From the NCBI GenBank assembly GCA_977017575.1, contig CDRNVI010000201.1, positions 37,261 to 101,260 on the forward strand: DNA of 64,000 nt, given 5' to 3'. The notes beneath the pieces are model-generated. The model made no database searches, was not told the origin of the DNA, and was given only the letters and a program-made list of their open reading frames with translations. Position 1 is the stretch's first letter; each line of letters starts with the position of its first letter. A program made the position numbers and the translations under genes. The stretch is from Paramoeba atlantica (lineage: Eukaryota; Protista; Discosea). This document shows positions 33,201 through 52,000 of the stretch, piece by piece.

Positions 33201-33864
33201 CGCATGAATCCGACGAGATCTCACAAGAAATGTCTCCAGATTGAAGAACTGCATCGTAGATATTCTCTGAGATAGTTACCTCTCCCCCTTCTACTTCTAT
33301 CTCGATGTCGAGATCAGAAAGACCAATGTCTCGGGGCAGATAAATTGTGATTTCCACAACATCATCATCTGCGGTGACCGCTCCGCTAAAAACCAAGAGA
33401 GAAGCAAGAACAGCAACTTGTGGAAAGCGATTGGTTGTTCCCGCTGCTGGACCACCCCTCCCCCCTGCCACGAGGAAATAAAAGGGACTCAAAAACAGCA
33501 CATTTCTCCAAAGGGGTCGGAGAATCGAGCCACTCGATTTGTCATCATCATCACTATCACCATCATCACTATCATCACCATCGCCGGGAGGACGGATAAC
33601 CGCAACAAGTTTATCGCCATCTTCATTGAGGGAAAAACTAATGGAAAGATCATCAAGACCCGAACCTTCAACTAGCATAGAAGGGAACGCCAGAGGGTCA
33701 ACATCAACAACCTTCACGATTGTCTTCACCCCGGATGTTGTCACAACGAGAGAAACTGCGCTTGCCTTATCGGCATAATAATCTTCGAGGACAGTTAGTT
33801 GACTATCCGACCAACACGAGCCAACAAAGAAAAGAAGAATGAGCAAGGGAGAATGAATTGTCAT
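30277..33864 (-). CDS. Uninterrupted 1195-aa acidic secreted mosaic protein (EGF-like, DDG-x-GD anchor-X-like motif, FN3-like, beta-rich domains)
   Basis: Single ORF from ATG 33864 (MTIHSPLLILLFFVGSCWS signal peptide); CCSGFGSCSEDGCSCDDGHGGDGC; LYDDGEDIHGDKEEGDLIFSN; VSSTSAIVSF...YTVLVY...ELSSENDYEFLV. Confidence 0.8.
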   Translation of the reverse strand: MTIHSPLLILLFFVGSCWSDSQLTVLEDYYADKASAVSLVVTTSGVKTIVKVVDVDPLAFPSMLVEGSGLDDLSISFSLNEDGDKLVAVIRPPGDGDDSDDGDSDDDDKSSGSILRPLWRNVLFLSPFYFLVAGGRGGPAAGTTNRFPQVAVLASLLVFSGAVTADDDVVEITIYLPRDIGLSDLDIEIEVEGGEVTISENIYDAVLQSGDISCEISSDSCDVCCSGFGSCSEDGCSCDDGHGGDGCDHSTLSFDIEPEDLLLGALYSLVLRIYSEDIPEAAYYNVYFDEAATNLITKLYDDGEDIHGDKEEGDLIFSNVAVWFPTSGESFTFYALPFNSEDEQLEPKLSKQVLYWGSTEEESEYPSDDPIDYDAPISEFVDIVSVIAVSSTSAIVSFLPPEMYRGIIEETTYTVLVYIVGGSESPVQTIPFEGSFNQLISVSISELSSENDYEFLVSYVPPTAKRDSPAKEVILEGSLLADAGTIALQSNYVVVNLFDGNLDSMEEEDGFYILTISDVEVPSLDSGDTVIFTLPFADAIESDEPYMKAIEEVEASVYKCESVELNEFVSGSSLIRASVDSLGGSLYYGNEPTEDENGCLSKMEYDDTTNFGVYQSECVTNDDEKRRDLSASVSCSDSSPDKRRGLFDGVKSFQYASGFRYDCDALIQDGPFSASFSGAPLLQGQLKGTAAITFRDSWSDTKIESSLSAEANYHIEVVYKATAEIAGSDSGEKDIFKKKVKIGIFFIGFLPVYLELKAVSTAKYSAEFSLETEAVIEGVFDGVVNQKSTMVYDPMADDKFTSTYGAPKSKFTFQPKAEATAKLSLGFSFDIETRLGLVISKLVSLGVSIDTKLPLQGEVSAIATTDESPCKQLFKESAPPYVFGFLVDELSAKVTLDTKLFVGDGDLDTILDLEISVYDKTWLIYAIPTAISLDEKSEHKYIAEEDPYEGSTDHYYYSESKWGILSDSSSPNLFPKNKAGTRSSKTSIQGTKLEDYSDVAVFMYPKLAGPYFGRCESAALAPSPPPSSDLFWDFSDSGYNAGGNGGAPRSYDSDTISSVVGPAWSLFTDTLLWSIEDSTNCGGSNSNTQVASATGSFVAESSGKFIINYEGYGERQDTTFDTLTVYFDDDQISFARSPGGGHGCDGVGPVVSNPPTPISVDFDEGEHTILLEGDTEDSLYHVGAYYLCQVILEFD

Positions 33865-34605
33865 TTCGAGGAACAAAAAACTAAAACTGAAAAAAGTGCA
33901 AAGTTCACAAAAAGTTTTACAACCGAAAGATCCCCTGTGGAGTCACACATTTCAAGTGCAATGACGTGTCGACATTTAATTGGAAGAAATTTCAAAGATG
34001 CACATACTACTTTCCAAATTAGGAGAGGCACGAGTTACACCTCCGACTGATCCGGAGACTTCTCTGAGAAGATTTTGAGGATCAAAATCCGTCAATTCAC
34101 AAGGGAGCAGCGGTTTATCAAACTCCACCACTGATTTTCTTTTAAATCCTTTTTCCAAAAAGCCCTCCCAAAAAATAGGTTTGGTTGTGGCGACAACCTG
34201 GGTGACTCAACCGCGACGACCTCTTCTGAGAGTGAGTTTCAATAATCTTGAACTGACTTTTTCAACTCCCCTTTTTGAACCCTTGGCGAAGGAAAATAAA
34301 CTTTTTTAAAAAAAGCTGGAAAATAGCGACAGAGAAAGGTGGGAAGTTGCAGTTGGTAAGAGGCGGAAACGAATGGCGAAGAGGATAAAGAGAAAGAGAA
34401 AGAGAAGAGAGCGCGAAGAACAAACGAAAAAAAAACCAAAGATTTTTCCTCATCCATACGTCACCTCAAAAAATACACTAAAAAGTCCATACCCGAATTT
34501 TCTTTATTCTTTTTCAATTTGTTTCTGTTTTCGTTTTCAAAAGTTTTTCCTTTTCTCTCTTTTGTGAGAATTTCTTGAAAAGTTCTTTCTCTTTTTTGTT
34601 GTTTG

Positions 34606-35645
34606 ATGAATTTGAATGAGAGAAATATGATGGAGGAGGAGGTGGTGGGGGAAAGAGAGAGGACTGAGAGAAGAGAGGAAGAGGGGAAGAGGAAGAGAAA
34701 AGAAGAAGAAGAGAAAGGGAGAGAAAAACAAAGAAATGGGGTGATTAAAAGACCGAAACTGGAAAATGAAGAACTTGAAGTGGTGAAATTGAGAATAGAA
34801 GAAGAAGAGAAGAAGAGAAAAGAAGAAGAAGAAGAGAAAAAGAGAAAAGAAGAAGAAGAGAAAATGAGAAAAGAGTTGAAAGAACAATCATTCAAGGTTT
34901 GTGAATTTTCTTCTTCTTTCTTTCTCTTTTTTTCCTAATGTTTTGGGGGGGAGGGGAGAGAGAGAGAAGGAAAGAGAGAAGGAGAGAAGGGGAGAGGGGG
35001 AGAGGGGGAGAGAGTCTCACCACACACACAATTTGAACTCTTTTTTCTCAAAAACAAACAAAAAAATCACTCTCTTTTTATCACAACTTTAAAATAATAT
35101 CTTTTTTTTATTTTTTTTTTTGAATATTTATCTTTTCCTCATTTTTCTATTTTTTTTTAATGTAAAGGATGGAGTAACTCCTCTTTTTGTTGCTGCTCAA
35201 CAAGGAGATGAACAAATTGTTCAAATTTTATTGGAAAAAGGAAAACCAAATGTTGATCTTCCAGATAAGGTTCTTTTGTTGATTGTTTCTTTTTCTTTTT
35301 CTTTTTCAGTTTCTCATTTTTCTCTTTTTTTTTAATGTAAAGTATGGAGCAACTCCTCTTTTTATGGCTGCTCAAAATGGACATGAACAAATTGTTCAAA
35401 TTTTATTGGAAAAAGGAGAACCAAATGTTGATCTTCCAGATCAGGTTCTTTTGTTGTTTGTTTCTTTCTTTTTCTTTTTCTTTTTCTTTTTTTTTTCTTT
35501 TCTTTTCAGTTTCTCATTTTTCTATTTTTTTGATTTAAAGGATGGAACAACTCCTCTTTTTATGGCTGCTCTAAATGGATATGAACAAATTGTTCAAATA
35601 TTATTGGAAAAAGGAAAACCAAATGTTGATCTTCCCAGGGACAAA
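34606..35645 (+). CDS. Ankyrin exon-array gene A: charged first exon plus 3 single-repeat exons, no cap exons (truncated or upstream cassette)
   Basis: First exon MNLNERNMMEEE...; repeat exons at 35168, 35343 and 35541. Confidence 0.6.
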
Positions 35646-36259
35646 GTTTGTTCTTTTTTTGGTATTTTTTGGTATTTTTTGGTATTTTTTTGGAGGTTGT
35701 GGTATTTTTTGGTATTTTCCTGTTATTTTTTGGAATTGTTTTGGATTGTTTGGTATTTTTTCAGATTCACAAAAGTTTTCAAATTGGACGGAGATAACTG
35801 GAGATAAGGCTTGGTTTTTGAAAATAACAGGTGTATACCGGTGTAAATACTGGTAAATACTGGTAAATACCTGGCATTTTTTTGTTCATGGCCCTTTTTC
35901 AGTTTTCCTGTTTGGTTTTGAAGTGATAACAGGTGATTGGTGGTTGGTTTGTTTTTTTCGTTCTCTCAGTTTTTTTTTAAAGAAAAAGCAAAAGTGAGGT
36001 TTCAAGTTGAGTATTCATTTGTTTTTGTAGGGATAAAGGATATGGGTGGGAAAAAAAGAGTCCAAAAAATCAAGAGGCAAAGAAACAGTAAAATTGGAAG
36101 AATCGAAAAGGTTTTGCTCCCAAAAGTCCAGAGGAACTAAAATTAAATAAAAAAGAACAAAAAGACCCCCCCAACCAACCAAAACCCTTCTTTTTCTTTT
36201 TTTTGTTTTTTTGTTTTGGGTCTTGTTTTTTGTTTTGTTTTGTTTTTTGTTTTTTCTTG

Positions 36260-39200
36260 ATGAATTTGAATGAGAGAAATATGATGGAAGAGGAGGTGGT
36301 GGTTGGGGAAAGAGAAAGGACTGAGAGAAGAGAAGAAGAGAGATTGAGAAACGAAGAAAAAGAAGAAGAAAAAGAAGAAGAAAAAGAAAAAGAAGAAGAA
36401 AAAGAAAAAGAAAAAAAAGAAGAAGAAAAAGAAAAAGAAAAAGAAAAAGAAGAAGAAAATGAAAAAGAAGAAGAAGAAAAAGAAGAAGAAGAAGAAGAAG
36501 AGAAAGTGAGAAAAGAGTTGAAAGAAAACTCATTCGAGGTTTCTGAATTTTCAATCTTTCTTTTCTTTCTTTCTTTTTTCTTTTTCTTTCTTCTCTCTCT
36601 TTTCTTTCTTTTTTTGTTTCTTTTCTTTCCTTTTTCTTCTTTTTTACTCTTCTTCTTTTTCTCTCTTTCTCTCCTTTCTTTTCTCCCTTTTCTTTGTTTT
36701 TTCGCTCTATTTCTATGTTCTGAGACAATTCTCTATTTTAATAATTCAATTCAATATTTTTCTTCCAATTTTTTTTTATTTTGATTTCAAAAAAAGGAAT
36801 TATTCGAAATTGCTTTGATGGAACAAGATTGGATTCGACTTGAGACACTCTTTGAGATGACAAAAAAACTTGATTATCCCAATGTTCTCTTTTCTTTTTT
36901 TTTTCTCTTTTTTTCTTTTTCTTTTCTTTTCTTTTCCTTTTGAGTGATATTTTTAAATTTTTTTTTGGGAGCAATTTTAACTCTTTTTTCTCAAAAAAAA
37001 AACAAAACAAAAAAACAAAAATAGTTTGGAATAAGAGATCTCCATATTGCTTCTTTGAAAGGAGATGAAAAGAAAGTTGAATTATTATTGAAAGAAGGAG
37101 CAAATATCAATGCTTTTGAACAGGTTTTTTTTTTATTTTTATTTTTATTTTTAAATTTTTTGCTTTTCTTTCAAATCCAAAAATTGATCTCTTTTAATTT
37201 TATTATTTCTTTAGATTTATGGAAGAACTCCTCTTTTTATTGCTGCTCAAAATGGAGATGAACAAATTGTTCAAATTTTATTGGAAAAAGGAAACCCAAA
37301 TGTTGATCTTCCAGATCAGGTTCTTTTGTTGATTCTTTCTTTTTCTTTTTCTTTTCAGTTTCTCATTTTTCTATTTTTTTTGAATGTAAAGGATGGAAGA
37401 ACTCCTCTTTTTATTGCTGCTCAAAATGGGAATGAACAAGTTGTTCAAATTTTATTGGAAAAAGGAAAACCAAATGTTGATCTTCCAAATGTGGTTCTTC
37501 TTTTTCTTTTTCTTTTTTTTTTTTTTTCAGTTTCTCATTTTTCTTTTGTTTTTTAATGTAAAGAATGGAACAACTCCTCTTTTTATTGCTGCTCAAAATG
37601 GACATGAACAAATTGTTCAACTTTTATTGGAAAAAGGAAAACCAAATGTTGATCTTGCAAATAAGGTTCTTTTGTTGTTTGTTTTCTTTTTCTTTTTCTT
37701 TTTTTTTCAGTTTCTCACTTTTTCTATATTTTTTTTAATGTAAAGACTGGAATAACTCCTCTTTATATTGCTGCTCAAAAAGGAGATGAACAAATTGTTC
37801 AAATTTTATTGGAAAAAGGAAAACCAAATGTTGATCTTCCAGATCAAGTTCTTTTGTTATTTGTTTCTTTTTCTTTTCAGTTTCTCATTTTTCTATTTTT
37901 TTAATATAAAGGATGGAGTAACTCCTCTTTATGTTGCTGCTCAAAAAGGAGATGAACAAATTGTTCAAATTTTATTGGAAAAAGGAAACCCAAATGTTGA
38001 TCTTCCAACTTTGGTTCTTTTGTTGATTCTTTCTTTTTCTTCTTTTTCTTCTTTTTTCATTTTTCTATTTTTTTTTAATGTGAAGGATGGAAGAACTCCT
38101 CTTTATATTGCTGTTCAAAATGGACACGAACAAATTGTTCAAATTTTATTGGAAAAAGGAAAACCAAATGTTGATCTTCCAGATAAGGTTCTTTTGTTGA
38201 TTGTTTCTTTTTCTTTTTTTTATCAGTTTCTCATTTTTCTCTTTTTTTTTAAAATGTAAAGTATGGAACAACTCCTCTTTTTATTGCTGCTGAAAATGGA
38301 CATGAACAAATTGTTCAAATTTTATTGGAAAAAGGAAAACCAAATGTTGATCTTCCAGATCAGGTTCTTTTGTTGATTCTTTTTCTTTTTCTTTTTCTTT
38401 TATCAGTTTCTCATTTTTCTATTTTTTTAATGTAAAGGATGGAGCAACTCCTCTTTTTATGGCTGCTCAAAATGGACATGAACAAATTGTTCAAATATTA
38501 TTGGAAAAAGGAGAACCAAATGTTGATCTTCCAGATGAGGTTCTTTTGTTTCTTTTTCTTTTTTTTTCTTTTTCAGTTTCTCATTTTTCTATTTTTTTTT
38601 AATGTAAAGTATGGAGAAACTCCTCTTTTTGTTGCTGCTCAACAAGGACATGAACAAATTGTTCAAATTTTATTGGAAAAAGAAGAACCAAATGTTGATC
38701 TTGCAAATCTGGTTCTTTTGTTGATTGTTTTCTTTTTCTTTTTCTTTTCAGTTTCTCATTTTTCGATTTTTTTTTAAAATGTAAAGGATGAAAGAACTCC
38801 TCTTTTTATGGCTGCTGAAAATGGACATGAACAAATTGTTCAAATTTTATTGGAAAAAGGAAAACCAAATGTTGATCTTCCAGATCAGGTTCTTTTGTTG
38901 ATTCTTTTTCTTTTTCTTTTTCTTTTATCAGTTTCTCATTTTTCTATTTTTTTTTAAAATGTAAAGTATGGAACAACTCCTCTTTGGATTGCTGCTCAAA
39001 ATGGACATGAACAAATTGTTCAAATTTTATTGGAAAAAGAAGAACCAAATGTTGATCTTCCAAATGAGGTTCTTTTGTTTCTTTTTCTTTTTTTTTCTTT
39101 TTCAGTTTCTCATTTTTCTATTTTTTTTTAATGTAAAGTATGGAAGAACTCCTCTTTTTATTGCTGCTGAAGAAGGACAAGAACAAATTGTTCAAATTTT

Positions 39201-41057
39201 ATTGGAAAAAGGAAACCCAAATGTTGATCTTCCAGATAAGGTTATTTTGTTGATTGTTTCTTTTTCTTTTCTTTTTCTTTTTTTTTCTTTTCTTTTCAGT
39301 TTCTCATTTTTCTATTTTTTTTATTTAAAGTATGGAGTAACTCCTCTTTATATTGCTGCTTGTGAAGGACATGAACAAATTGTTCAAATTTTATTGGAAA
39401 AAGGAGAACCAAATGTTGATCTTCCAGATCAGGTTCTTTTGTTGTTTGTTTTCTTTTTCTATTCTTTTTCTTTTCAGTTTCTCATTTTTCTATTTTTTTT
39501 TATGGAAAGGGTGGAAGAACTCCTCTTTTGATGGTTGCTAACAATGGATATGAACAAATTGTTCAAATATTATTGGAAAAAGGAAAAGCAAATGTTGATC
39601 TTCCAAATAAGGTTATTGTGTTATTCATCATCATTTTGAATTTGTTGATTTTGTTTTTCCAATCCCTCCAATGGAAGTGGAGGGGGAGTGGGTGGATATT
39701 GAGTGATATTTGTTTTGTGTTTTCTTTTTGAAGAATTCTTTTCTTTTTTTCAATCTTTTTTCTCAAGGATGGGTGGACCCCTCTTCATGTCGCTGCTTCT
39801 AATGGTTTTGAAGAAATTGTAAAGATTTTGATTGAACATTGTGCCAATGTTAATCTTCAAAACAAAGTTTTTTCATTTTTCTTCATTTTGATTTGTGTAT
39901 TTTTGTTTGTGTGGTGGGGTTCTTAATTTTTTTTTCCTCTCCTCTCTTCTTTTTCTTTTTTTTTTTTTTGCTTTTTTATTTTTCTATTTTTTTTTAATGT
40001 AAAGGATGGAGTAACTCCTCTTTCTATTGCTGCTTGTAATGGACATGAACAAGTTGTTGAAATTTTATTGGAAAAAGGAAAAGCAAATGTTGATCTTCCA
40101 AATAAGGTTATTGTGTTATTTGTTATCATTTTGAATTTGTTGATTTTGTTTTTCCAATCCCTCCAGTGGAAGTGGAGGAGAGGGTGGGTGGATATTGAGT
40201 GATATTTGTTTTGTGTTTTATTTTTTAAAAATTCTTTCTTTTTTTTTGAATCTTTTTTCTCAAGGATGGGTGGACCCCTCTTCATAGAGCTGCTGAGAAT
40301 GGTTTTGAACAAATTGTAAAGATTTTGATTGAACATCGTGCCAATGTTAATCTTCAAAACAAAGTTTTTTCATTTTTTTTTTTTTTCTCCTTTTTTGTTT
40401 CATTTTTGTTTTGTTTTTTCTTCATTTTTGTTTTGTGTTTTTTTGTTATTTGGGTTTTGGGGAATATCTCTTTTGATGTGAGTTGATCAAGGTGTTCTGT
40501 GATCTGTGTTTTTAATCTTCCTTTTTTTTTCTTTTTTGATGTGTTGTTTTTTAATATCATCTTTTTTGTCAAGGGCGGGAGGACCCCTCTTCATGTTGCT
40601 GCTGCGAAAGGTTTTGAACAAATTGTAAAGATTTTTATTGAACATCATGCCAATGTTAATCTTCAAAACAAAGTTTTTTCATTTTTCTGCATTTTGGTTT
40701 GTGTATATTTGTTTGTGGAATATATGTTTGTGGCGGGGTTCTTTTTTTTTTTTTGAACTTCTTTTTCTTTTTTTTTTGGTTAGGATGGGGAGACAGTCTT
40801 TGATGTTGCAAAGAACCACAAAATTGTTGATCTGATCATTCAATTGAAGGTTTGGTTTTTTTTCTCTCTTCTTTTTTTTTGTGAATTTTCTTTTCTCCTT
40901 TTTTTTCTTTTTTTTTTCTTTTTTTTTCTTTTTTTTTGATTGATTTTTTTGTTGAATATTTTATTTGAGTGTGGGAAAAAAGAATATGATCTCATTTTTG
41001 TTTTCTTGGTTGTAGGGACAAACTATAAAACCAGCTCGTGCAAAAAAAGAAAATTAA
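36260..41057 (+). CDS. Ankyrin exon-array gene B: charged first exon, 2 N-cap exons, 15 type-I and 3 type-II repeat exons, C-cap and GQTIKPARAKKEN tail
   Basis: 102-nt phase-0 exons xGxTPLxxAAxxGxEQIVQILLEKGxPNVDLPxx separated by homologous ~70-100-nt GT-AG introns; terminal exon 41016-41057. Confidence 0.9.
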
Positions 41058-41450
41058 ATTTCGAAAGTTCGAAAATAGAATTCCCCAAAAATTGACCTCT
41101 CTATCGGAAATTGCTCCATTCATTTGTGCTATCATCACTCTACTAAGACTTTGGAACCAAACCATAAAGAAGGTGACCAGTTCCAAAACAAGATTGTTGG
41201 GATTGTTCTTGCTGTTAATTGAAAATAATTTTGTTGTGTGGAATCAGCAGATAATAAAATTGTAAATGTAAAAGAAAAAAAAATAAAATAAATAACCTTT
41301 GTGGTGGACACACAAAAGGCTCCTGCAAGATCTGTTTCACCCTAAAATGTAAAAATAAATAATTAAATTTCATAAAAAGAAAAGAGGAAGAAAAGAGGAG
41401 AAAAGAAAACGATGATAAGATCAAAAAAAGCAGAAAAAAATTCAAAGCAG

Positions 41451-42350
41451 TCATGATATTGAATAAATAAATAACGCCTTCATAACCTTCATTCTCCAAC
41501 TGGAGCTATCGAGAAATTCAAGTGCACTATTCTTTTGGTTTTCACAGCAACCTCCTTCTCCTTCTTGATCTTTTCTCTTCTTTTTCTCTTCCTCTGCTGC
41601 TGCTGCTTGTCTCTTCTCCAAATCCTCTGTCTCCACACTCAACTCAACATCAAAGTTGTTCAGAAATGAAATTGCATCTTGGATGTTCTGAAGGCCTTTC
41701 GAGAAACAATTCATTTTATGTTCTAACCCCCGCTTTCTCTGAACTATTTTAGCCCGTCGATTGTCTTTTGAGATTCGACTCAATTATGTTCGAAAAGAAG
41801 CAATCGCCTTGGAATATTTTCTCTCTTGTGTCTGAAGAAAACCAATTCGTCCCTGCAATGCTTTTACAACTCCTTGATGCTGAACCCTTTCTTGGATTTG
41901 GTTTTGCCAAGCCTCCTCACGCTCTTGGAGTAACTTTTTCAACTCATCAATTTGTTGTTGTTGGAGTTCGATCACCCTTTGAAGTTGCTGTTCAGTTGTT
42001 GTGGAGGGGTGAAGAGAAGTGGGGGTGGTGGGAAATTGGTCGAAAGAGCTGGACATCAAGACTCTATGATGAAATTGTTGAAAGCAGGGTTTCAGAGGAC
42101 TGCTTGGGGTGATGGGTGATGGGGGTTTGTTGAAATGACGAGGTCCATGAAAATTAGATTCATGGAAGGAAGGGTTTGGAGTGGAAACCATTGAGGTTGG
42201 TGGTGGTGGAGGAAGGGGGAGTGGTGATGAGAGGTGGGTTCCAACAAGTGGTGGTTGTGATGATACCATCATTGAAGAGCCAAAACAACAATCTCTCGAT
42301 ATTTTTCGTTTTTTCGCTCTTGAACCTTCCAAAGTAAAATCATATTCCAT
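41451..42350 (-). CDS. Pro/Gln-rich coiled-coil, NLS-bearing ORF split by one in-frame TAA (41784-41786); may have further exons to ~41090
   Basis: Track ORFs 41784..42407 and 41451..41783 are in the same frame (…SFRT*LSRISK…); basic clusters AKKRK and KKKRK. Confidence 0.5.
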
Positions 42351-42875
42351 CGTTTGGTTTGGGGTTGTGGGGGGGGAGGGCGTACCAAGACAAAAAGAAA
42401 AACACACACAATAGAGAAAGGGAGAGGGGGGGTGAAAAATTTTGGAGAGATAAGAGAGATGGATAAGAGAAAGGAGAAAAAGAAGAGAAGTTGTCCTTTT
42501 TAGGGTCCTCTTTTATTTTTTTTTAATCGGAAATCCGCTCCTCTGAAAGAGAAGAACAAAAGAAGAACACAATCAAAAAGAAGAAAAGAAAAACAGAATG
42601 AAGAGTGAAAAGAGAGAGAGAGAAAAGTTAAAAGAGGCCAAGGTTTGTTTTTAGATTTTCAATATGGCGGCAGACAGCGGCCTGACCAGCGAAAGAAGAT
42701 TTGAAAAGAAAACCCGAAGCTGCAGAAGAGAAAGAAGGATTTTGGGAAATGGGAGAACGGAAAATTTCCCTTTCTTTTTTTCCTCGAAATTTGGGTTTCT
42801 CAATTTTTTGTGCGGGTTTTTCTTCTTTTTTTTCCTTTGTCTCTCTCTTTCTTGTTTCTCTTTCAATAATTTTAT

Positions 42876-43847
42876 ATGGCGTCATCTTCCTCCTCCTCTT
42901 CCTCTTGTTCTCCATCCTCTTGTTCTCCTCCTTCATCCCCTTGTTCTTCATTGTCATCCTCAACACCAAACCACAACACAAAAGAAGGTGCTTTAGAACC
43001 TCCACCAAAAAAACGACGATTGACACAAAAGAACCAGATTCACAAGTTGTATGTTGAAGTTGAATCACTTGAGATCGTAAAATCTTCGACCCATTTTGGT
43101 CCAAGCTCTGAAAAAGATTATCACACAATCAGAAGAAACACACTTCTCCTTGTGAGGTTAGACAGAAAGGATATTGTCGCAAAAGGGCTGCTCTTGAAGA
43201 ATGTTCTCCCAAAAGACAAAGTGGAGGCTCTCGCAAATCTCTTGTGGAAAAACAAAAATACCAAAGGTTGGTGGGAATCGAAGCTTGATACGAGACGAAG
43301 CCCTTCATCAAATATCCGTAAGAACTATGTTCGAACTGGTTTTTGGCATCAAGTTGGACATGCAACCCCTAAGTATGGACCATTTGAAGCTGGAACAGCA
43401 GGAAAAGATCCTGAGATTCGGGATTGTTTGAATTCCTTCCTTCTGCCATTGGCAGAAATTACCTCACAAAAACTCGCAAAATTTGATCCCTTCATCACAG
43501 AGTTGGTGGCTGGTTTACCCAATTTTCCATTTGGTTCCTTTCACCTTTTTATGTGCACTCGAGGATCTTCTGCATTTCATCGTGATCCGAATGATTATGT
43601 GGCATTTTTATTCCCCATTTTTGTTGAACAGGGAAAGAAAGGGGCGTTAGAAATTGGAAGAGTGTCAAGGGGGTTTTATTGGCAAGTGGGTGACGGAATA
43701 CTATTAAATTCACGTGACTTGGAACATGGGACTCGTAATTATGAAGGAAATGAAGATAATCGAATGATTGGGATATTTTTGATTCAACACCCTTATTTGA
43801 ATGTACATGGGATTGATTTGAAGAAAGAACAATCAAAAAAGAAATAA
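42876..43847 (+). CDS. TET/JBP-family 2-oxoglutarate/Fe(II) dioxygenase (putative DNA-base oxidase), intronless
   Basis: HRDPND (HxD), GDGILLNSRDLEHGT (distal His), NRMIGIFLIQH (2OG-binding Arg, resembling TET RxSLVFYQH); upstream DPF...LPNFPFGSF; NLS PPPKKRR. Confidence 0.75.
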   Translation: MASSSSSSSSCSPSSCSPPSSPCSSLSSSTPNHNTKEGALEPPPKKRRLTQKNQIHKLYVEVESLEIVKSSTHFGPSSEKDYHTIRRNTLLLVRLDRKDIVAKGLLLKNVLPKDKVEALANLLWKNKNTKGWWESKLDTRRSPSSNIRKNYVRTGFWHQVGHATPKYGPFEAGTAGKDPEIRDCLNSFLLPLAEITSQKLAKFDPFITELVAGLPNFPFGSFHLFMCTRGSSAFHRDPNDYVAFLFPIFVEQGKKGALEIGRVSRGFYWQVGDGILLNSRDLEHGTRNYEGNEDNRMIGIFLIQHPYLNVHGIDLKKEQSKKK

Positions 43848-44184
43848 AAAAAAAGGAATTTATCATCATCTTCCCTTTTTTGTAATTAATTGTTTTGTTT
43901 TTGTTTTTGTGTTATTTTATCTTGATAATCCCTTTTTTTTTCCCCTCATCATTTTTCATCATTTTTATTTAATAATGCTTTTGTTAAAAAAGAAATAATA
44001 TTTGAGAATTGGAGGGAAAAAATGATCTTTTAATAAAATTAGGGATTTTTATTCTCTAATAATCAAAAACAATAATTCCTCCACCCCCCAATATCTCCAC
44101 CAGCCTCACCTTTCTCTTTCTCTTTCTCGCATGTGGTATCCAATTCCCCCCATCTCTCACATATCCCCATTTCTCCCCCCTCCT

Positions 44185-44964
44185 TTAATAACGAACAGCA
44201 TTAAATGAGTTAGTTCCTACAACTCGTGCAGAAAATTTCACCATTCCGAACCCTTTTTCAAAAGAGACCACAAGTGGGCATTTGAAAGGAACTTTAACGA
44301 GACAGCAGATTTGCGAGAATCGGACAGATTCGAGAACAATTTTGTTTTTCCCATCGTCTTCACTGTTAAAAGGGAAGTCTTTTCTCCGCCACTTATCAGT
44401 CCCAAATTTTCGATCCAATGTTTCCAAATCTTCCTCATTTGAAATCACTATCTTCTTCCGAGCATCAGTTTCTTTCATTTCTCCCACTCCTTCAAAAAAC
44501 CAATCAAACAAAGGAAGTGGTAATGGAAAAGCTCCTTTGATATCACTTCGATGGTGTTTCCACGACCATTTGAGGCGTTCCTCAAACTTTGGAAGAATTA
44601 AGTAATTGACAAACCAAGAAGGGGGAGCAGATGGCAGCTGCTGGGTGGTTGTTGGGGGTGGAGGAGGAGACAGTGAATGGTCATCTGTTCCAGCCTCCCC
44701 CTTTCGTTCGACTCCTTTGTCTTCTTCACACAAGTCTCCTCCTTGTCGATTCAACATCACGGAGTGGTCAGCGGTGGTGGTGGAGAACACCAAAGCAACA
44801 ATATCAGTGCTGCTCCTTGACAAATGTTCTTCTTCCTCGCTGTTGGTGGTGGTGCTGCATTGTGAGGACGCACGTTTTTTTTTTCTTGAAAAATCAAGAA
44901 CCCAAACATCATCTTCAAACACCTTTTTGACTCTTTTCCTTTTCCCTGGCCCAAACTCTTCCAT
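44185..44964 (-). CDS. Intronless 259-aa hypothetical nuclear protein
   Basis: Normal-composition ORF with ATG; two NLS-like clusters (GKRKRVKK, RKKKR). No family recognised. Confidence 0.55.
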   Translation of the reverse strand: MEEFGPGKRKRVKKVFEDDVWVLDFSRKKKRASSQCSTTTNSEEEEHLSRSSTDIVALVFSTTTADHSVMLNRQGGDLCEEDKGVERKGEAGTDDHSLSPPPPPTTTQQLPSAPPSWFVNYLILPKFEERLKWSWKHHRSDIKGAFPLPLPLFDWFFEGVGEMKETDARKKIVISNEEDLETLDRKFGTDKWRRKDFPFNSEDDGKNKIVLESVRFSQICCLVKVPFKCPLVVSFEKGFGMVKFSARVVGTNSFNAVRY

Positions 44965-45138
44965 TCCAATCGAAAACAGAAAACGTGAAATGCACCAACA
45001 TCACTGCCGCAAGGAAAGTTGAAAAAAGGGACAACAGGGACACCCTGCCACGTCAGCCCCATACAAAAAATTTGTAATGAGGGATTTGAACCCACATTCT
45101 TGTTTTTTGTTGTTTTTTGTTGTTTTATTTTTTGTTTG

Positions 45139-47983
45139 ATGAATTTAAATGAGAGAAATATGATGGAGGAGGAGGTGGGGGAAAGAGGGAGTCCTGAGAG
45201 AAGAGAGGAGGAGGGGAAGAGAAAAGAAGAAGAGGATGAGAAAATGAGAAAAGAGTTGAAAAAATCATTCGAGGTTTGTGAATGCTCTTCTTCTTTTTCT
45301 TTCTCTCTTTTTTTTTCCTTTTTCAATTTTTGGGGGAGAGAGGAGAAGGGGAGAGAGCAGGAGCTGAGAGAGGGGGAGAGAGTTTCATTTGAAGGATTTA
45401 GAGTTTTGAGAAGAGGAAGAGGGGTTTTTCGGGGAAGGTTCAGAGGGAAGAAGAAGAAAGGGAGAGAGAGAGAGGCGTTATTGATGGAGATGAACCAGGG
45501 TGAGTGGGCAGCAAGTGTGGAGTTGATGATGATTGTGATATGTTTTTCTGTCTTTGGGGAAAAGGTCAAGGATGGTTGTGAGGGGGGGGAGGGAGGGAGG
45601 GAGGGAGGGAGGTGGGGAGGTGGGGATTGAAGTGTTTTTTTTTGGGGGGGGTGAGGGGGGATTGAGGGGTCAAAGAGGAAGAGGGAAAGAGAAAATAATT
45701 TGCCCTTTTCCTGACCCTTTCTTTTTTTTTGGAAAAGCCCCTCCCCCCCCTTGTGGTATTTTTCTATTTTTTGAATGTTTATCTTTTTAAACAAAAGGGT
45801 GGAGCAACTCCTCTTTATATTGCTGTTCAACAAGGAGATGAACAAATTATTCAATCTTTATTGGAAAAAGGAAAAACCAATGTTGATCTTGCAACTTTGG
45901 TTCTTTTGTTGATTCTTTCTTTTTCTTCTTTTTCTTCTTTTTTCAGTTTCTCATTTTTCTATTTTTTTGAATGTAAAGGATGGAAGAACTCCTCTTTTTA
46001 TTGCTGCTGAAAATGGAGATGAACAAATTGTTCAAATTTTATTGGAAAAAGGAAAACCAAATGTTGATCTTGCAAATAAGGTTCTTTTGTTGATGTTTCT
46101 TTTTCTTTTCTTTTTTTATCAGTTTCTCATTTTTTGATTTTTTTTTTATGTAAAGAATGGAAGAACTCCTCTTTTTATTGCTGCTTTTGAAGGACATGAA
46201 CAAATTGTTGAAATTTTATTAGAAAAAGGAAAACCAAATGTTGATCTTTCAGATAAGGTTCTTTTGTTTGTTTCTTTTTCTTTTTTTTTCTTTTTCATTT
46301 TCTCATTTTTCTATTTTTTTTTAATGTCAAGGATGAAAGAACTCCTCTTTTTGTTGCTGCTGCACATGGAGATGAACAAATTGTTGAAATTTTATTGGAA
46401 AAAGGAAAACCAAATGTTAATCTTCCAGATGAGGTTATTTTGTTGATTGTTTCTTTTTCTTTTTCTTTTTCTTTTTCTCATTTTTCTATTTTTTTTAATG
46501 TAAAGTATGGAAGAACTCCTCTTTATGTTGCTGCTCAAAATAGACGGAAACAAATTGTTCAAATTTTATTGGAAAAAGGAAAAGCAAATGTTAATCTTCC
46601 AGATCTGGTTCTTTTGTTGATTGTTTTCTTTTTCTTTTTCTTTTCACTTTCTCATTTTTCGATTTTTAATGTAAAGGATGGAAGAACTCCTCTTTTTATG
46701 GCTGCTCAAAAAGGAGATGAACAAATTGTTCAAATTTTATTGGAAAAAGGAAACCCAAATGTTGATCTTCCAGATGAGGTTATTTTGTTTGTTTCTTTTT
46801 CTTTTTTTTTCTTTTTCATTTTCTCATTTTTCGATTTTTTTTTAATGTAAAGGATGGAAGAACTCCTCTTTTTGTTGTTGCTCAAAATGGATGGAAACAA
46901 ATTGTTGAAATTTTATTAGAAAAAGGAAAACCAAATGTTAATCTTCCAGATCAGGTTATTTTGTTGATTGTTTCTTTCTTTTTCTTTTTCTTTTTCTTTT
47001 TTTTTCTTTTCTTTTCAGTTTCTCATTTTTCTATTTTTTTGATTTAAAGTATGGAGCAACTCCTCTTTTTATGGCTGCTCTAAATGGACATGAACAAATT
47101 GTTGAAATTTTATTGGAGAAAGGAGAACCAAATGTTGATCTTGCAGATCAGGTTCTTTTGTTGATTGTTTTCTTTTTCTTTTCTTTTTTTTTTTTTCACT
47201 TTCTCATTTTTCTATTTTTTTTTAATGTAAAGTATGGAAAAACTCCTCTTTTTATGGCTGCTGACAATGGATATGAACAAATTGTTCAACTTTTATTGGA
47301 AAAAGGAAAGGGAAATGTTGACCTTGGAGATGAGGTTATTGTGTTATTCATTATCATTTTGAATTTGTTGATTTTGTTTTTCCAATCCCTCCACTGGAGT
47401 GGAGTAGAGGGTGGGTGGATATTGAGTGATATTTGTTTTGTGTTTTATTTTTTTAAAAATTCTTTTTTTTTAATATCATCTTTTTTCTCAAGGATGGGTG
47501 GACCCCTCTTCATGTTGCTGCTTCTGATGGTTTTGAAGAAATTGTAAAGATTTTGATTGAACATTGTGCCAATGTTAATCTTCAAAACCAAGTTTTTTCA
47601 TTTTTCTTCATTTTGATTTGTGTATTTTTGTTTGTGGAATAAATATTTGTGGTGGGGTTCTTAATTTTTTTCTTTCTGAACTTCTTTTTCTTTTTTTTTG
47701 GTTAGGATGGGGAGACAGTCTTTGATGTTGCAAAGAACCACAAAATTGTTGATCTCATCATCCAATTGAAGGTTTGCTTTTTTTCTCTCTTCTTTTTTTA
47801 ATCCATTTTCCTCTTTTTTTTCTTTCTTTCCCCCTTTTTTTTCCTTTTTTTTCTTTTTTGATTGATTTGTTTGTTGAATAAATATTTTATTTGAGTGGTG
47901 GGAAAAAAGAATGTGATCTCATTTTTGTTTTCTGGTTGTAGGGACAAACTATAAAACCAGCTCATGCAAAAAAAGAAAATTAA
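45139..47983 (+). CDS. Ankyrin exon-array gene C: charged first exon, 9 type-I and 1 type-II repeat exons, C-cap and GQTIKPAHAKKEN tail
   Basis: Repeat exons from 45798 to 47493 with the same intron sequence as gene B; same C-cap exon DGETVFDVAKNHKIVDLIIQLK. Confidence 0.88.
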
Positions 47984-49000: not shown

Positions 49001-52000
49001 TGTTGGAGGTGAAACAGGGAAAATGATAAAACCGATGTAAGGCACGAGGGTTTAGAGAGGAAAATGAGAATAAACTTTATTTGTGACAAACAAGGTTGCG
49101 CGAACAAGCGACAATGGAATAGGTGGTTGCATTGCAATGTTTCAGGAGGATGCGACAATGTCTGGACAACTTCGATGAAACCAGATTTATCTTAATAAGG
49201 TTAGAAGTTGCATCCAACACTCCCCTCCATCCAATGAATACTTCAATGCAATCCGGAAAAACAAACATTCGTGTGTCTCTCATGCAGGATTCTCTCGAGA
49301 GGCTTGGTCATCACGTCCGCATGTTGTACAGAGGAACGGCGATAAACAAGAGAAATGGTCTTATTTTCAATCAACTCTCGAATAAAATGCAGTTTAATAT
49401 CAATGTGCTTGGTTCTCGACTTGATCATCGGGTTGTTTGCAATGTCAATAGCTTGTTGATTGTCCTCATAAATTAAAATAGGGGTTTTAACCGTCAAACC
49501 CAGAGTCTCCAACAATTGTTTCAGATACATAATCTCTTTTGTGACCTCAGCTAATGCATAATATTCAGCATCAGTTGATGAGAGTTTCACAGAAGGGGTT
49601 GTCTTGGAACACCAGGAAATCAGATTGGAGCATAAGAAAACCAAATAGCCGTAGGTGGAGCGACGGTCGTATTGATCAGCAAAGGCAGCATCACAAAACG
49701 CACTCAAATCGACAGTCATCAATTTGGGGTCGAAACTAGCAGGGCGGACGAATTTGATTTCCTCATTAGGGCGTCCATTCAGATAAGAAATAAGGCGACA
49801 AATAGCGTTCTCAAGTTCTTTGGAGGGACGGGTTTGGAACTTGCAGATCTGGCCAACAGCATATGAGATATCTGGTCGGGTGTTGGAGGCATACAAGAAC
49901 TTCCCATTGATCGTGGGGATGGGGATGTTGGTGGGATAGCTATCAGGGCACAATCTTACTTTTGGGTCAGCAGGGGTCTTGTAGTGGATTCGAACCAGGT
50001 GATTGTATTCTTGACAGATCGACTTCACATAATCAGATTGGTCCAAAGAAACTTGAAAGAGCTCATCTTGCTTGATCTGCATTCCAATCAACCAATCAAC
50101 TGTGTCAAAGTATTTTAGATCATATTTTCCACACATGTATTCCACGAAGCACTCGTGCAATTTTGTGCAGGTGGAAAACCAGGTCAAGTCATCCACGATA
50201 GTGACCAAAAACATAATTCCATTTGATTCAGCAATCATGAACAGACAAGGATCAACATCGTTCCGAATGAAGCCAAAAGCCAACAGGGACTCAACCAAAT
50301 GATTGTACCAGTTTCGACCAGCAGGGGGATATCCATAAATTCCCTTCAACATCAGCCACACAAAATCATTTCCTTTCTCAACAAAACCAGGGGGTTGACT
50401 TATATAAACGGGTTTCGCATCAGGATCAACATCAGCACAAACATATGCTGAGGGTACATCACCACCATGGAGCTTACATCCAAATAGGGCAGCCAAACAC
50501 AGAATGGTTCTCAGAGTGGAGGAACGGGCAACAGGGGAATACACCTCATTGATGGAGTCCGGAATAAATGAAGAGCCATTGACACAGTATCATGACTTAA
50601 AGGAAGTAACCTTTCCATGTTGTGTTTTGATGCGATATCTCCACAAACCAGGTAAAATTACCGCATTCGAATAATCGATTTGGTTCTTGTGGACAAGGAC
50701 AAAAGCTTTCCTTTTCATGAGGGCATCGCACTCTCTCTTCATTGATTCAAGCCATTCGCGCTTCTCTCGGGAGGCAATAGCACCTTTGAAAGTTTTCGGG
50801 GTCAATGCAGTTGAGATGTCTTCCTCAGCCATGAGAGCAGCCGTCATTGAGATTTCAAAATCATCCCATTGTTTCTTCTTCCTTTCTCGAGCAGATCTTC
50901 TGGGTTCAGAGGGAGTTTGGGTCAGATTGGGTACAGGTGGGGTAATATCTCAGTCATGTGCACCAGATTCATAAAAACCATCTGAATATTCAAAGTTTTC
51001 AGGGCCATGGATCAATTCCTCCCCTCCATCTTGGGATTCCTCCTCACAAGGTGTCTCTTCCTCAAGTTCCTCAAATGAGATAGGTTCAGAAGATGGTTGT
51101 GGTCTGAAAAGGTCAATAGAAGGAGCAGAAGATCCACCAATATACTTTTGGTAGAGAGATTGGACACCAAAGGCAGTCTCGTCAAAAACCACATTAGCAG
51201 ACTCGAAAAATTTCTTCGCAATTGGGTCCCACATGTGGTAAGCAGCCATATTGGGGGCAGGTCGCACATAAATTCCGAATCAAACTTTGGGCTTCAATTT
51301 CTTCTGTTGTTCCTCAGGTAGCAAAGAGAAAGCATGGCAGCCAAAGGCTCTGAAGTACATCCAGTCAGGTCAGGTTTTGAAGAGAGCTTCCATTGGTGAG
51401 ATCTTTGCATCGCCATGGACAGTAGATTGGTAACACAAATCAAAGAATTCAGCTGCTTCAGGCCAGAAGAAGTCAGGACAGTGACCAGAATGGAGGTTGG
51501 ATCTGATTCCCTCTTGAGAGGTACGGTTGTATCTCTCAGCAATTGCGTTTTGTTCGTGCTCAGAACGTGCAGACCATTGAAGATGGATCCCTTTCTCTTT
51601 ACAAAATTTCGAAAGTTTTCCGTGCTTGCCAATGAACTCTCCAGCACCATCACATTGGATAATCTTCACACGAGTGTCGCATTGTTGTTCCAATTTCGCG
51701 ACAGCAACAATAATATCATCAGCAGCATCATTCTTCAGCTTCAAAGACGAACAGAGAGGATGACGAGATTTGTGTTCAATGATTGTCAACTGGTACTTGA
51801 AGCCACCAATTCCCACAACATTCAAATACAAAATGTCGACATGAATAAATTCTCCGTAATTGAAATCACACCGTGGTTCGATCTTGATATGTGGAGAGCG
51901 AGAAAGCTTCCCAGAAACACATCCCAATACACAATCAGTTTTGTCATTGTGGAGCACTCGAGGTAAATTGCGGCCAACTTGAAGCTCAACAGTCCGTTTA

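What the first reader, a model, noticed from the sequence alone, without database searches (positions are those of the whole stretch)
35168..47983. Natural 'DARPin library': one ankyrin repeat per phase-0 exon, with variation at the paratope positions
Seen: 27 type-I exons (3 in A, 15 in B, 9 in C) of 102 nt (two are 105 nt), each encoding one repeat, separated by homologous introns (gttcttttgttg...cagtttctcat...aatgtaaag). Helix 2 (EQIVQILLEKG) is almost invariant even at silent sites. The changes cluster at xGxTPLxxAAxxGx and at the last two residues, e.g. DGV/YGA/NGT/TGI/YGE/DER/YGK and QQ/QN/LN/QK/EN/EE/CE/FE/AH/DN. I found no two exons identical across these sites. Established: these are positions 2, 3, 5, 13 and 14, the ones randomised in designed ankyrin (DARPin) libraries, and the intron falls between positions 2 and 3 in the beta-turn. 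Inference: exon skipping, unequal crossover or conversion gives in-frame new binding surfaces, as proposed for exon-shuffled LRR/TPR immune genes in brown algae. This is a candidate diversified intracellular recognition (immune-like) system in a protist.
Basis: partly seen in the sequence, partly recalled or inferred. Interest (0 to 1): 0.88.

Follow-up and report, generated by a model that had tools for sequence, protein, structure and literature searches.

The report
Fast-evolving modular ankyrin gene cluster
Three neighbouring genes of a large family encode ankyrin-repeat proteins built from near-identical 34-residue cassettes, one per small exon. Their target-contacting residues change several times faster than silent DNA, which marks a rapidly diversifying set of intracellular binding proteins whose targets and splicing are still untested.

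Summary
There are 27 homologous exons (3 in gene A, 15 in B, 9 in C), each 102 nt (two are 105 nt) and each bounded by AG and GT. Each encodes one Pfam ankyrin repeat, and homologous 64-96-nt introns separate them.

B (23 exons, 800 aa) and C (13 exons, 419 aa) are intact, all-phase-0 genes with dedicated cap exons. A is a truncated copy.

Nucleotide identity between cassettes (88%) exceeds amino-acid identity (74%). In disjoint exon pairs dN/dS is 2.2 in the window (p 2e-4). It is 2.4 across 71 exons of eight family genes (p 2e-12).

Twelve codons exceed the silent rate. They include all six positions randomised in DARPin libraries. Their silent third positions are unchanged, which argues for selection and against a mutation hot spot.

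Cassette number, block duplications and mosaic variation point to unequal crossover and conversion.

The family lies on at least about 60 contigs of one assembly. This scan had already noted it on other DNA of the same genome.

No signalling domain is present and no RNA data could be obtained, so exon skipping and an immune role remain untested.

The closest known cases are the highly internally conserved ANK repeats of fungal NLRs and the exon-shuffled LRR/TPR genes of brown algae. I class this as a new variant of a known kind.

The parts
34606..35645 (+). Gene A, a truncated paralog. It has an E/K-rich exon 1 (34606-34896) and three type-I cassettes (35168-35269, 35343-35444, 35541-35645). 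It has no type-II, C-cap or tail exon and runs into a TTTTTTGGTA microsatellite.
   Evidence: Exon 1 is homologous to exon 1 of B and C.
36260..41057 (+). Gene B: 23 exons, all AG/GT, every exon length a multiple of 3, an intact 800-aa ORF.
   Evidence: Gene model and translation. All 22 introns begin GTT.
36797..37123 (+). N-cap exons of gene B: an 87-nt helical cap exon (36797-36883) and a 99-nt type-0 ankyrin exon (37025-37123). Both are absent from A and C.
   Evidence: Homologous exons occur in family members L004 and L005.
37215..39611 (+). Gene B main array: 14 type-I cassettes (a 102-nt exon, the first 105 nt, plus a 64-90-nt homologous intron).
38262..39068 (+). Recent block duplication inside B: units 10-11 (38262-38539) against units 13-14 (38787-39068). 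Introns differ at 4 of 218 sites and exons at 14 of 214, almost all non-synonymous.
   Evidence: Fisher p 0.016.
39510..40363 (+). Duplicated two-exon block, type I + type II: 39510-39611 with 39768-39866, and 40005-40106 with 40265-40363.
   Evidence: Units 17 and 18 share the gttattgtgttat donor and the same long intron.
40574..41057 (+). Gene B 3' end: a third type-II exon (40574-40672), the C-cap exon (40784-40849) and the tail exon with stop codon (41016-41057).
   Evidence: The cap and tail exons are conserved in five other family genes.
45139..47983 (+). Gene C: 13 exons, all phase 0, an intact 419-aa ORF. It comprises exon 1 (45139-45273), nine type-I cassettes (45798-47334), a type-II exon (47493-47591), the C-cap (47706-47771) and the tail (47942-47983).

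Best explanation
This is a tandem cluster of two intact genes and one truncated gene. It belongs to a large, young multigene family of intracellular all-ankyrin proteins. Each protein has an E/K-rich N-terminus, optional N-cap exons, 3-15 near-identical 'type I' repeats, 1-3 'type II' repeats, a C-cap and a short basic tail. Each repeat is a cassette made of one phase-0 exon and one homologous short intron. Shown: cassettes are gained, lost and duplicated in blocks. Their variable residues are reassorted. Amino-acid changes at the target-binding face (beta-turn tip and inner helix) accumulate 2.7-7.6 times faster than silent changes, while the framework is under purifying selection. Inferred: unequal homologous recombination and short conversion between the roughly 175-bp units generate length and mosaic variants that always stay in frame. 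Positive selection then fixes new binding-face residues. The result is a germline-encoded repertoire of binders with different paratopes and lengths. Conjecture: the ligands are fast-evolving proteins of intracellular microbes, viruses, a symbiont or selfish elements. The proteins carry no enzymatic or signalling domain, so they would act as adaptors or blockers.
For: Anatomy. Ankyrin identity and position mapping. Selection: nucleotide identity of 88% exceeds amino-acid identity of 74%, with the framework at 92% and the 12 variable positions at 40%. In 13 disjoint pairs in the window, dN is 0.140, dS is 0.063 and dN/dS is 2.2 (p 2.4e-4). In 35 disjoint pairs from 71 exons of 8 genes, dN is 0.159, dS is 0.067 and dN/dS is 2.4 (p 2.4e-12). 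Twelve codons lie above the silent rate after Bonferroni correction, and they include all six DARPin positions. Within-gene pN/pS is 1.8-4.7 in all eight genes. Third positions of hypervariable codons 1 and 3 never vary. First and second positions of the variable codons change 3.8-7 times faster than intron sites of the same base class. With an intron reference that was not used to choose the pairs, intron divergence is 0.09-0.10, dS is 0.068 and dN is 0.15-0.16. Recombination: 250 of 595 site pairs fail the four-gamete test, which requires at least 12 recombination or recurrent-mutation events within 102 nt. Upstream and downstream introns of a cassette have different nearest relatives. Family: 151 ORF hits come from about 60 contigs of one assembly. 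Five more genes share the same architecture. Splice sites are real: a paralog carries a precise intron loss exactly at the predicted junction (L006 4386-4589).
Against: There is no transcript evidence. One probable RNA run holds 11% of the sampled words, which could come from DNA. No effector or signalling domain was found and no ligand is known. Pairs chosen by intron similarity are not proven sister cassettes, and recombination weakens tree-like assumptions. A conservative count of minimal mutation events gives omega 1.43, which is not significant (p 0.12). A second assembly of the locus shows no coding difference, so ongoing polymorphism is not shown. Gene conversion combined with purifying selection on old differences can imitate dN > dS.
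Confidence: 0.65

Rival explanations
1. Concerted evolution without an arms race. The repeats are old and each has a fixed, functionally required set of surface residues. Frequent gene conversion homogenises introns, silent sites and the framework. Purifying selection rejects conversions that overwrite the specific residues. Under this reading dN > dS is an artefact of reset neutral sites.
For: Introns and silent sites are strikingly uniform even between dispersed loci. The mosaic structure shows that sequence exchange does occur. Work on highly internally conserved (HIC) repeats treats concerted evolution as part of the phenomenon (PMC13449251).
Against: Hypervariable codons (1, 3, 7, 8, 11, 12, 14) interleave at 3-9-nt spacing with invariant silent sites in codons 2, 4-6, 9, 10 and 13. 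Conversion tracts would have to be only a few bases long to reset the silent sites and spare the variable codons. The recently duplicated block of units 10-11 and 13-14 has introns 1.8% diverged but exons 6.5% diverged, nearly all of it non-synonymous. Those differences therefore arose after the duplication.
Confidence: 0.2
2. Combinatorial use of cassettes within one organism. Regulated exon skipping, or somatic recombination between the homologous introns, would make many isoforms with different binding surfaces from each gene.
For: All exons are symmetric phase 0 and nearly all the same length, and splice signals are almost identical between cassettes, so any skip stays in frame. Brown-algal genes with one repeat per exon do show alternative splicing, according to the titles of Teng et al. 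2023 and 2024 (PMC11378527; reference list seen).
Against: No RNA data could be examined. No spliced or exon-skipped products appear in the protein collections. The introns are 64-96 nt, a range usually handled by intron definition, where intron retention is more common than skipping (inference from general knowledge). The second assembly shows the same exon order.
Confidence: 0.08
3. Neutral tandem expansion or decaying pseudogenes. The array would be a recently amplified satellite-like unit with relaxed constraint and no function.
For: Gene A is truncated. The region is rich in transposons and insertion polymorphism. The event-count test alone is not significant.
Against: B and C keep intact ORFs of 800 and 419 codons through 23 and 13 exons, with every splice site preserved. 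Nine codons never change and the framework dN/dS is below 1, while the binding-face dN/dS is well above 1. Neutral decay would spread changes evenly and would hit third positions too.
Confidence: 0.05
4. Targeted mutagenesis. A hypermutation mechanism aimed at the variable codons, in the manner of diversity-generating retroelements or AID, would create the pattern instead of selection on random mutations.
For: The variable sites are extremely localised.
Against: Third positions inside the most variable codons are invariant (pi 0.000 at codons 1 and 3) while positions 1 and 2 reach pi 0.46-0.70. A mutational hot spot would not respect the genetic code. No reverse-transcriptase template pair lies beside the arrays; the RT ORFs belong to a copia element 1.3 kb downstream of gene C.
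Confidence: 0.02

Closest known systems
Highly internally conserved (HIC) ANK, TPR and WD repeats of fungal NOD-like receptors (Dyrka et al. 2014, PMC4986451; PMC13449251)
   Same: Both have near-identical tandem repeats with a handful of hypervariable positions under positive diversifying selection. In both, those positions map to the concave binding face of the ANK solenoid. Repeat number varies, and repeats appear to be shuffled or evolve in concert.
   Different: No NACHT or NB-ARC NTPase and no death or effector domain is present here. Each repeat is a separate phase-0 exon with its own conserved intron, whereas the fungal repeats are contiguous coding DNA. Protein identity between repeats (mean 74%, framework 92%) is below the 85% HIC cut-off used in that paper. 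The host is an intron-rich protist, not a fungus. Strain polymorphism was not shown here.
Exon-shuffled LRR-ROCO and NB-ARC-TPR candidate receptors of Ectocarpus and other brown algae (Zambounis et al. 2012, PMC3341825; Teng et al. 2024, PMC11378527)
   Same: One repeat is encoded per exon, and consecutive phase-0 exons have identical length. The families are large and variable, and solvent-exposed residues are under positive selection. Both have been proposed as repertoires for recognising variable ligands.
   Different: The repeat type is ankyrin, not LRR or TPR. There is no GTPase or NB-ARC signalling module. The selection signal here is stronger and more site-specific than that reported for the algal TPR exons. 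Alternative splicing was not tested here.
Designed ankyrin repeat proteins (DARPin libraries; PDB entries such as 6mol and 5leb hit)
   Same: Both have an N-cap, identical consensus internal repeats, and a C-cap. Diversity is confined to positions 2, 3, 5, 13, 14 and 33.
   Different: This is a natural, germline-encoded family. The repeat is 34 residues with one extra residue in the loop after helix 2. Additional variable positions occur at 1, 9, 10, 16, 22 and 28. The TPLH histidine is replaced by F or Y.
Animal ankyrin genes (ANK1-3), in which many of the 24 membrane-binding repeats are encoded by single 99-nt exons (recalled from memory, not checked here; AnkR/AnkB structures were the top PDB hits)
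   Same: They share the correspondence of one ankyrin repeat to one exon.
   Different: The animal repeats are old, diverged and under purifying selection. Their introns are not homologous, and they do not form a multigene repertoire.

Membership tests
Ankyrin repeat (Pfam PF00023, clan CL0465) | Sequence match to the Ank profile above the curated gathering score | tested here: met
   The type-I exon scores 35.3 bits and the type-II exon 47.9 bits, against a cut-off of 21.1. There are 392 PDB ankyrin or DARPin chains matched at E <= 0.01.
HIC repeat domains of NLR/STAND receptors | High internal conservation of tandem repeats (85% identity or more over at least 100 aa in Dyrka 2014) | tested here: inconclusive
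   Mean pairwise identity is 74% for amino acids and 88% for nucleotides. The 22 framework positions are 92% identical. This is close to the published protein cut-off but below it.
HIC repeat domains of NLR/STAND receptors | A few hypervariable positions under positive diversifying selection on the binding surface | tested here: met
   Twelve codons have dN/dS of 2.7-7.6 after Bonferroni correction, including all six DARPin binding positions.
HIC repeat domains of NLR/STAND receptors | Repeat-number polymorphism between strains | tested here: inconclusive
   Only one other assembly of the locus was found, and gene B is identical in it. Paralogs differ widely, with 3, 15 and 9 cassettes here and 7-13 at other loci.
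HIC repeat domains of NLR/STAND receptors | Fusion to a NACHT or NB-ARC NTPase and an N-terminal effector domain | tested here: not met
   The complete gene models of B and C contain only an E/K-rich exon, ankyrin exons, caps and a tail. Pfam finds nothing in exons 1 and 2.
Brown-algal exon-shuffled repeat receptors (Zambounis 2012) | One repeat per exon, with successive phase-0 exons of identical length | tested here: met
   All 36 exons of B and C have lengths that are multiples of 3. Of the 27 type-I exons, 25 are exactly 102 nt.
Brown-algal exon-shuffled repeat receptors (Zambounis 2012) | Linked signal-transduction module (ROC-COR GTPase, kinase or NB-ARC) | tested here: not met
   None is present in B or C. 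None was seen in the five other gene models examined.
Brown-algal exon-shuffled repeat receptors (Zambounis 2012) | Isoform diversity by alternative splicing of repeat exons (Teng 2023/2024) | not testable with these tools
No spliced products are in the protein collections.
Somatically assembled repeat receptors (lamprey VLR type) | An incomplete germline gene completed by copying flanking cassettes in somatic cells | not tested
   B and C are complete germline genes. No single-cell or clonal DNA data were available.

The most novel reading that the evidence does not exclude
The homologous introns and symmetric exons are used within the life of a cell or clone. Regulated exon skipping, or mitotic recombination between cassettes, would produce per-cell or per-clone repertoires of intracellular ankyrin binders. 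That would be a protist counterpart of anticipatory receptor diversification, built on ankyrin repeats instead of LRR or Ig domains.
Probability: 0.07. Interest if true: 0.95.

Novelty: new variant of a known kind. Interest (0 to 1): 0.62.

Why it matters
Highly conserved repeat arrays with a hypervariable binding face are so far tied mainly to NLR-type immune receptors of fungi, and exon-per-repeat shuffling to brown algae. This family combines both designs in an intron-rich protist, uses ankyrin repeats, and lacks any NOD module. Rapid binder diversification may therefore be a more general eukaryotic strategy than the NLR framework suggests.

The family is also a natural counterpart of DARPin libraries. 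It shows which extra positions (1, 9, 10, 16, 22, 28) evolution diversifies on this scaffold.

If the host is an amoeba that carries a eukaryotic endosymbiont, these proteins are candidates for managing intracellular partners or parasites. That host identity comes only from another note of this scan and was not tested here.

Tried and rejected
Nothing was laid.

2. An exact scan of metagenome contigs for the helix-2 DNA motif gave no match. A degenerate peptide scan of the same collection found only generic ankyrin loci at 41-67% identity.

3. A profile search of 1.84 billion representatives with the 27-exon alignment was dominated by giant generic ankyrin proteins. Only P0095 was a family member.

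4. Two word-index protein searches looked for spliced products. All family hits were genomic ORFs reading through in-frame introns. The hits from short contigs (P0274, P0275, P0278) and P0282 were unrelated ankyrin proteins.

5. A minimal-event (spanning-tree) count of substitutions gave omega 1.43, p 0.12. This count saturates at the variable sites, so I did not use it as the main test, but I report it.

6. Ungapped comparison of intron flanks was misleading because of poly-T indels. I replaced it with pairwise alignment.

7. Structure prediction of a whole protein was not run.

8. Literature searches for Paramoeba with ankyrin found no description of this family.
Full report
**Observation**

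A scan for the helix-2 DNA motif, allowing 8 mismatches, finds 27 copies, all on the + strand. Three lie at 35.2-35.6 kb (gene A), 15 at 37.2-40.1 kb (gene B) and 9 at 45.8-47.3 kb (gene C).

- Each copy lies in a 102-nt open exon that is preceded by AG and followed by GT.
- Two exons are 105 nt: 35541-35645 and 37215-37319.
- The 23 short introns between them are 64-96 nt and are homologous to each other. They share a GTTCTTTTGTTG-type 5' end, a TTCTCAT branch-like motif 24-28 nt from the 3' end, a T-tract, and AATGTAAAG at the 3' end.
- Tandem Repeats Finder reports the roughly 175-nt period.
- The exon product is an ankyrin repeat: Pfam PF00023 scores 35.3 bits against a cut-off of 21.1.
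- The PDB search returns AnkR/AnkB and many DARPins.

**Gene models**

Joining the exons gives two intact genes.

- Gene B (36260-41057) has 23 exons. Every exon length is a multiple of 3 and every boundary is AG/GT. It encodes 800 codons.
- B is built from an E/K-rich exon 1, an 87-nt helical cap exon, a 99-nt type-0 ankyrin exon and 14 type-I cassettes. These are followed by a type-II exon (99 nt, DGWTPLH...IEH.ANVNLQNK), one more type-I exon, two more type-II exons, a 66-nt C-cap exon and a 42-nt tail.
- Gene C (45139-47983) has 13 exons and 419 codons. It lacks the two N-cap exons.
- Gene A (34606-35645) has exon 1 and three cassettes only, then runs into a microsatellite. It is a truncated copy.
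- The genes have no signal peptide, no membrane segment and no non-ankyrin Pfam domain.
- All 34 introns of B and C start with GTT.

**Where the variation lies**

- Eleven columns are invariant and eight more are at least 90% conserved.
- Column entropy peaks at exon positions 3, 34, 11, 14, 1 and 12. Five of these six are DARPin-randomised positions. Those positions are 2, 3, 5, 13, 14 and 33, which I take from general knowledge of Binz et al. 2003; the DARPin repeats differ at these places. The hypergeometric p is 1.3e-4.
- All 27 exons are distinct at the six positions.
- Nucleotide identity between cassettes (mean 87.6%) exceeds amino-acid identity (73.5%). The 22 framework positions are 91.6% identical and the 12 variable positions 40.5%.

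**Is the variation faster than neutral?**

Averaged over all pairs in the window, pN is 0.144 and pS 0.055. At the 11 most variable codons pN is 0.335 against pS 0.108. At the other 23 codons pN and pS are both about 0.04.

Cassettes share ancestry, so I also used disjoint pairs chosen by the similarity of their flanking introns.

- 13 pairs in the window give dN 0.140, dS 0.063 and omega 2.2 (Fisher p 2.4e-4).
- Adding five further family genes from other contigs gives 71 exons and 35 pairs, with dN 0.159, dS 0.067 and omega 2.4 (p 2.4e-12).
- Exon positions 1, 3, 7, 8, 11, 12, 14, 20, 26, 32, 33 and 34 each exceed the silent rate after Bonferroni correction, with dN/dS 2.7-7.6. The structural positions lie between 0 and 1.
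- All six DARPin positions are among the twelve (p 7e-4).
- Within-gene pN/pS is 1.8-4.7 in each of the eight genes.

**Three controls**

- Choosing pairs by intron similarity biases intron divergence downward. When pairs are chosen on one flank and scored on the other, intron divergence is 0.09-0.10, dS is 0.068 and dN is 0.15-0.16. The whole exon is then 1.5-1.8 times the intron rate, and the twelve codons (dN 0.18-0.50) lie well above it.
- The genome is AT-rich, so G/C sites may mutate faster. Within base classes, first and second positions of variable codons change 3.8 times (G/C-involving) and 7 times (A/T only) as often as intron sites of the same class. Framework positions change less often than introns.
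- A mutational hot spot is unlikely. The third positions of the most variable codons never vary (pi 0.000 at codons 1 and 3), while positions 1 and 2 reach pi 0.46-0.70.

A conservative count of minimal mutation events gives omega 1.43, which is not significant (p 0.12). That count saturates at exactly the sites of interest.

**Recombination and turnover**

- Cassette number differs between the paralogs (3, 15 and 9) and is 7-13 in other family genes.
- Inside B, units 10-11 and 13-14 are a recent block duplication. Their introns differ at 4 of 218 sites and their exons at 14 of 214, nearly all non-synonymous (p 0.016).
- Units 17 and 18, each with its type-II partner, form another duplicated block.
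- 250 of 595 informative site pairs fail the four-gamete test, including 22 of 69 pairs no more than 6 nt apart. This requires at least 12 recombination or recurrent-mutation events within 102 nt.
- A cassette's nearest relative by its upstream intron is no closer than average by its downstream intron, so the units are mosaics.

These facts fit unequal crossover and short conversion between cassettes, with the introns as safe in-frame breakpoints. That mechanism is inferred, not observed.

**The family**

- A word-index search with a stretch that reads through two in-frame introns found 151 ORFs at E <= 1e-10. All come from one ENA assembly, and the 120 listed lie on about 60 different contigs.
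- Four further contigs that I fetched carry five more genes with the same plan: type-I arrays, one type-II exon, a C-cap and a tail. Two of them also have the N-cap exons, and all have the same intron motifs.
- Contig L002 of that assembly is a second copy of this very locus at 99.8% identity. Gene B's exons are identical, two SNPs lie in introns, and a 3.2-kb A-tailed insertion sits just after B's stop codon. This gives no evidence for or against strain variation.
- Earlier notes of this scan list the same kind of array on at least eight other pieces of this genome. One follow-up (s1-369817) reached a similar rate estimate of about five times neutral. My tests are independent of it and agree.

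**Are the introns really spliced?**

I could not lay reads. 

- One probable RNA run of the same organism holds 11% of the sampled words, which is weak evidence.
- No spliced product is in the protein collections.
- Indirect support comes from a paralog (L006 4386-4589). Two cassettes there are fused with no intron, exactly at the predicted AAG|GAT junction. This is what a precise intron loss through a spliced transcript would leave.
- The intact 800- and 419-codon reading frames across 34 introns point the same way.

**Interpretation**

The best-supported reading is a germline repertoire of intracellular ankyrin binders that diversifies by cassette turnover plus positive selection on the binding face (confidence 0.65).

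- The main rival is concerted evolution that resets neutral sites while purifying selection keeps old, repeat-specific residues (0.2). Two things argue against it. Variable codons interleave with untouched silent sites at 3-9-nt spacing, and non-synonymous differences have arisen since the recent block duplication.
- Exon skipping or somatic shuffling is untested and, with 64-96-nt introns, less likely (0.08).
- Neutral decay (0.05) and targeted hypermutation (0.02) fit poorly.
- An immune or symbiont-management role is conjecture, because there is no signalling domain and no known ligand.

**Comparison with known systems**

[quoted passage not shown] There, a few positions on the concave face are under diversifying selection and repeat number is polymorphic (PMC4986451; PMC13449251).
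- It also matches the brown-algal LRR and TPR genes with one repeat per phase-0 exon (PMC3341825).
- It fails the membership test for both on the NTPase or signalling module. It falls slightly short of the 85% protein-identity criterion for HIC.
- I found no description of this family in papers on Paramoeba or its symbiont.
- The host identity is itself only a lead from another note of the scan, which calls part of the assembly Perkinsela-like. I did not test it.

I therefore class the finding as a new variant of a known kind.

Noticed in passing
window 36539-47941 (all introns of genes B and C): All 34 introns begin GTT (GTTCTT, GTTATT, GTTTTT, GTTTGT and similar), never GTA or GTG. All end AAG or TAG. 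This includes the non-homologous introns around the cap exons, so it may be the organism's general 5' splice-site consensus.
   Followed up: partly
L006 4386-4589: In a paralog, two type-I cassettes are fused into one 204-nt exon with no intron, exactly at the predicted splice junction. This is a precise intron loss and indirectly confirms the splice sites.
   Followed up: yes
L002 5777-8986, inserted at window 41072-41076: A second assembly of this locus (99.8% identical) carries a 3.2-kb AT-rich insertion with an A-rich tail. The flanks overlap by 5 bp, 15-19 nt after gene B's stop codon. It is probably a retroposon insertion polymorphism.
   Followed up: partly
window 42876-43847 (+) and 44185-44964 (-): Two intron-free ORFs of 323 and 259 aa lie in a GC-richer block between genes B and C. 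Neither has a Pfam match at E <= 0.01. Another reader labelled the block TET/JBP-like.
   Followed up: partly
window 30277-33876 (-): A single 1199-aa ORF, acidic and Cys-rich in parts, lies directly upstream of gene A and has no Pfam match.
   Followed up: no
window 49243-52671 (-): A copia-type retrotransposon (ORFs with the look of integrase and reverse transcriptase) lies 1.3 kb downstream of gene C.
   Followed up: no
window 34606-34896, 36260-36538, 45139-45273: Exon 1 of the three paralogs varies from 135 to 291 nt through expansion of GAA/AAG-type purine repeats that encode E/K-rich tracts. Gene A's copy contains KRKRK- and KKRK-like basic motifs.
   Followed up: no
protein P0108: An unrelated 1402-aa protein in the representative library joins a P-loop NTPase region to nine near-identical ankyrin repeats ending in NPNVDL, with variation at the same surface positions. 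It is an NLR-like example of the same design elsewhere.
   Followed up: no
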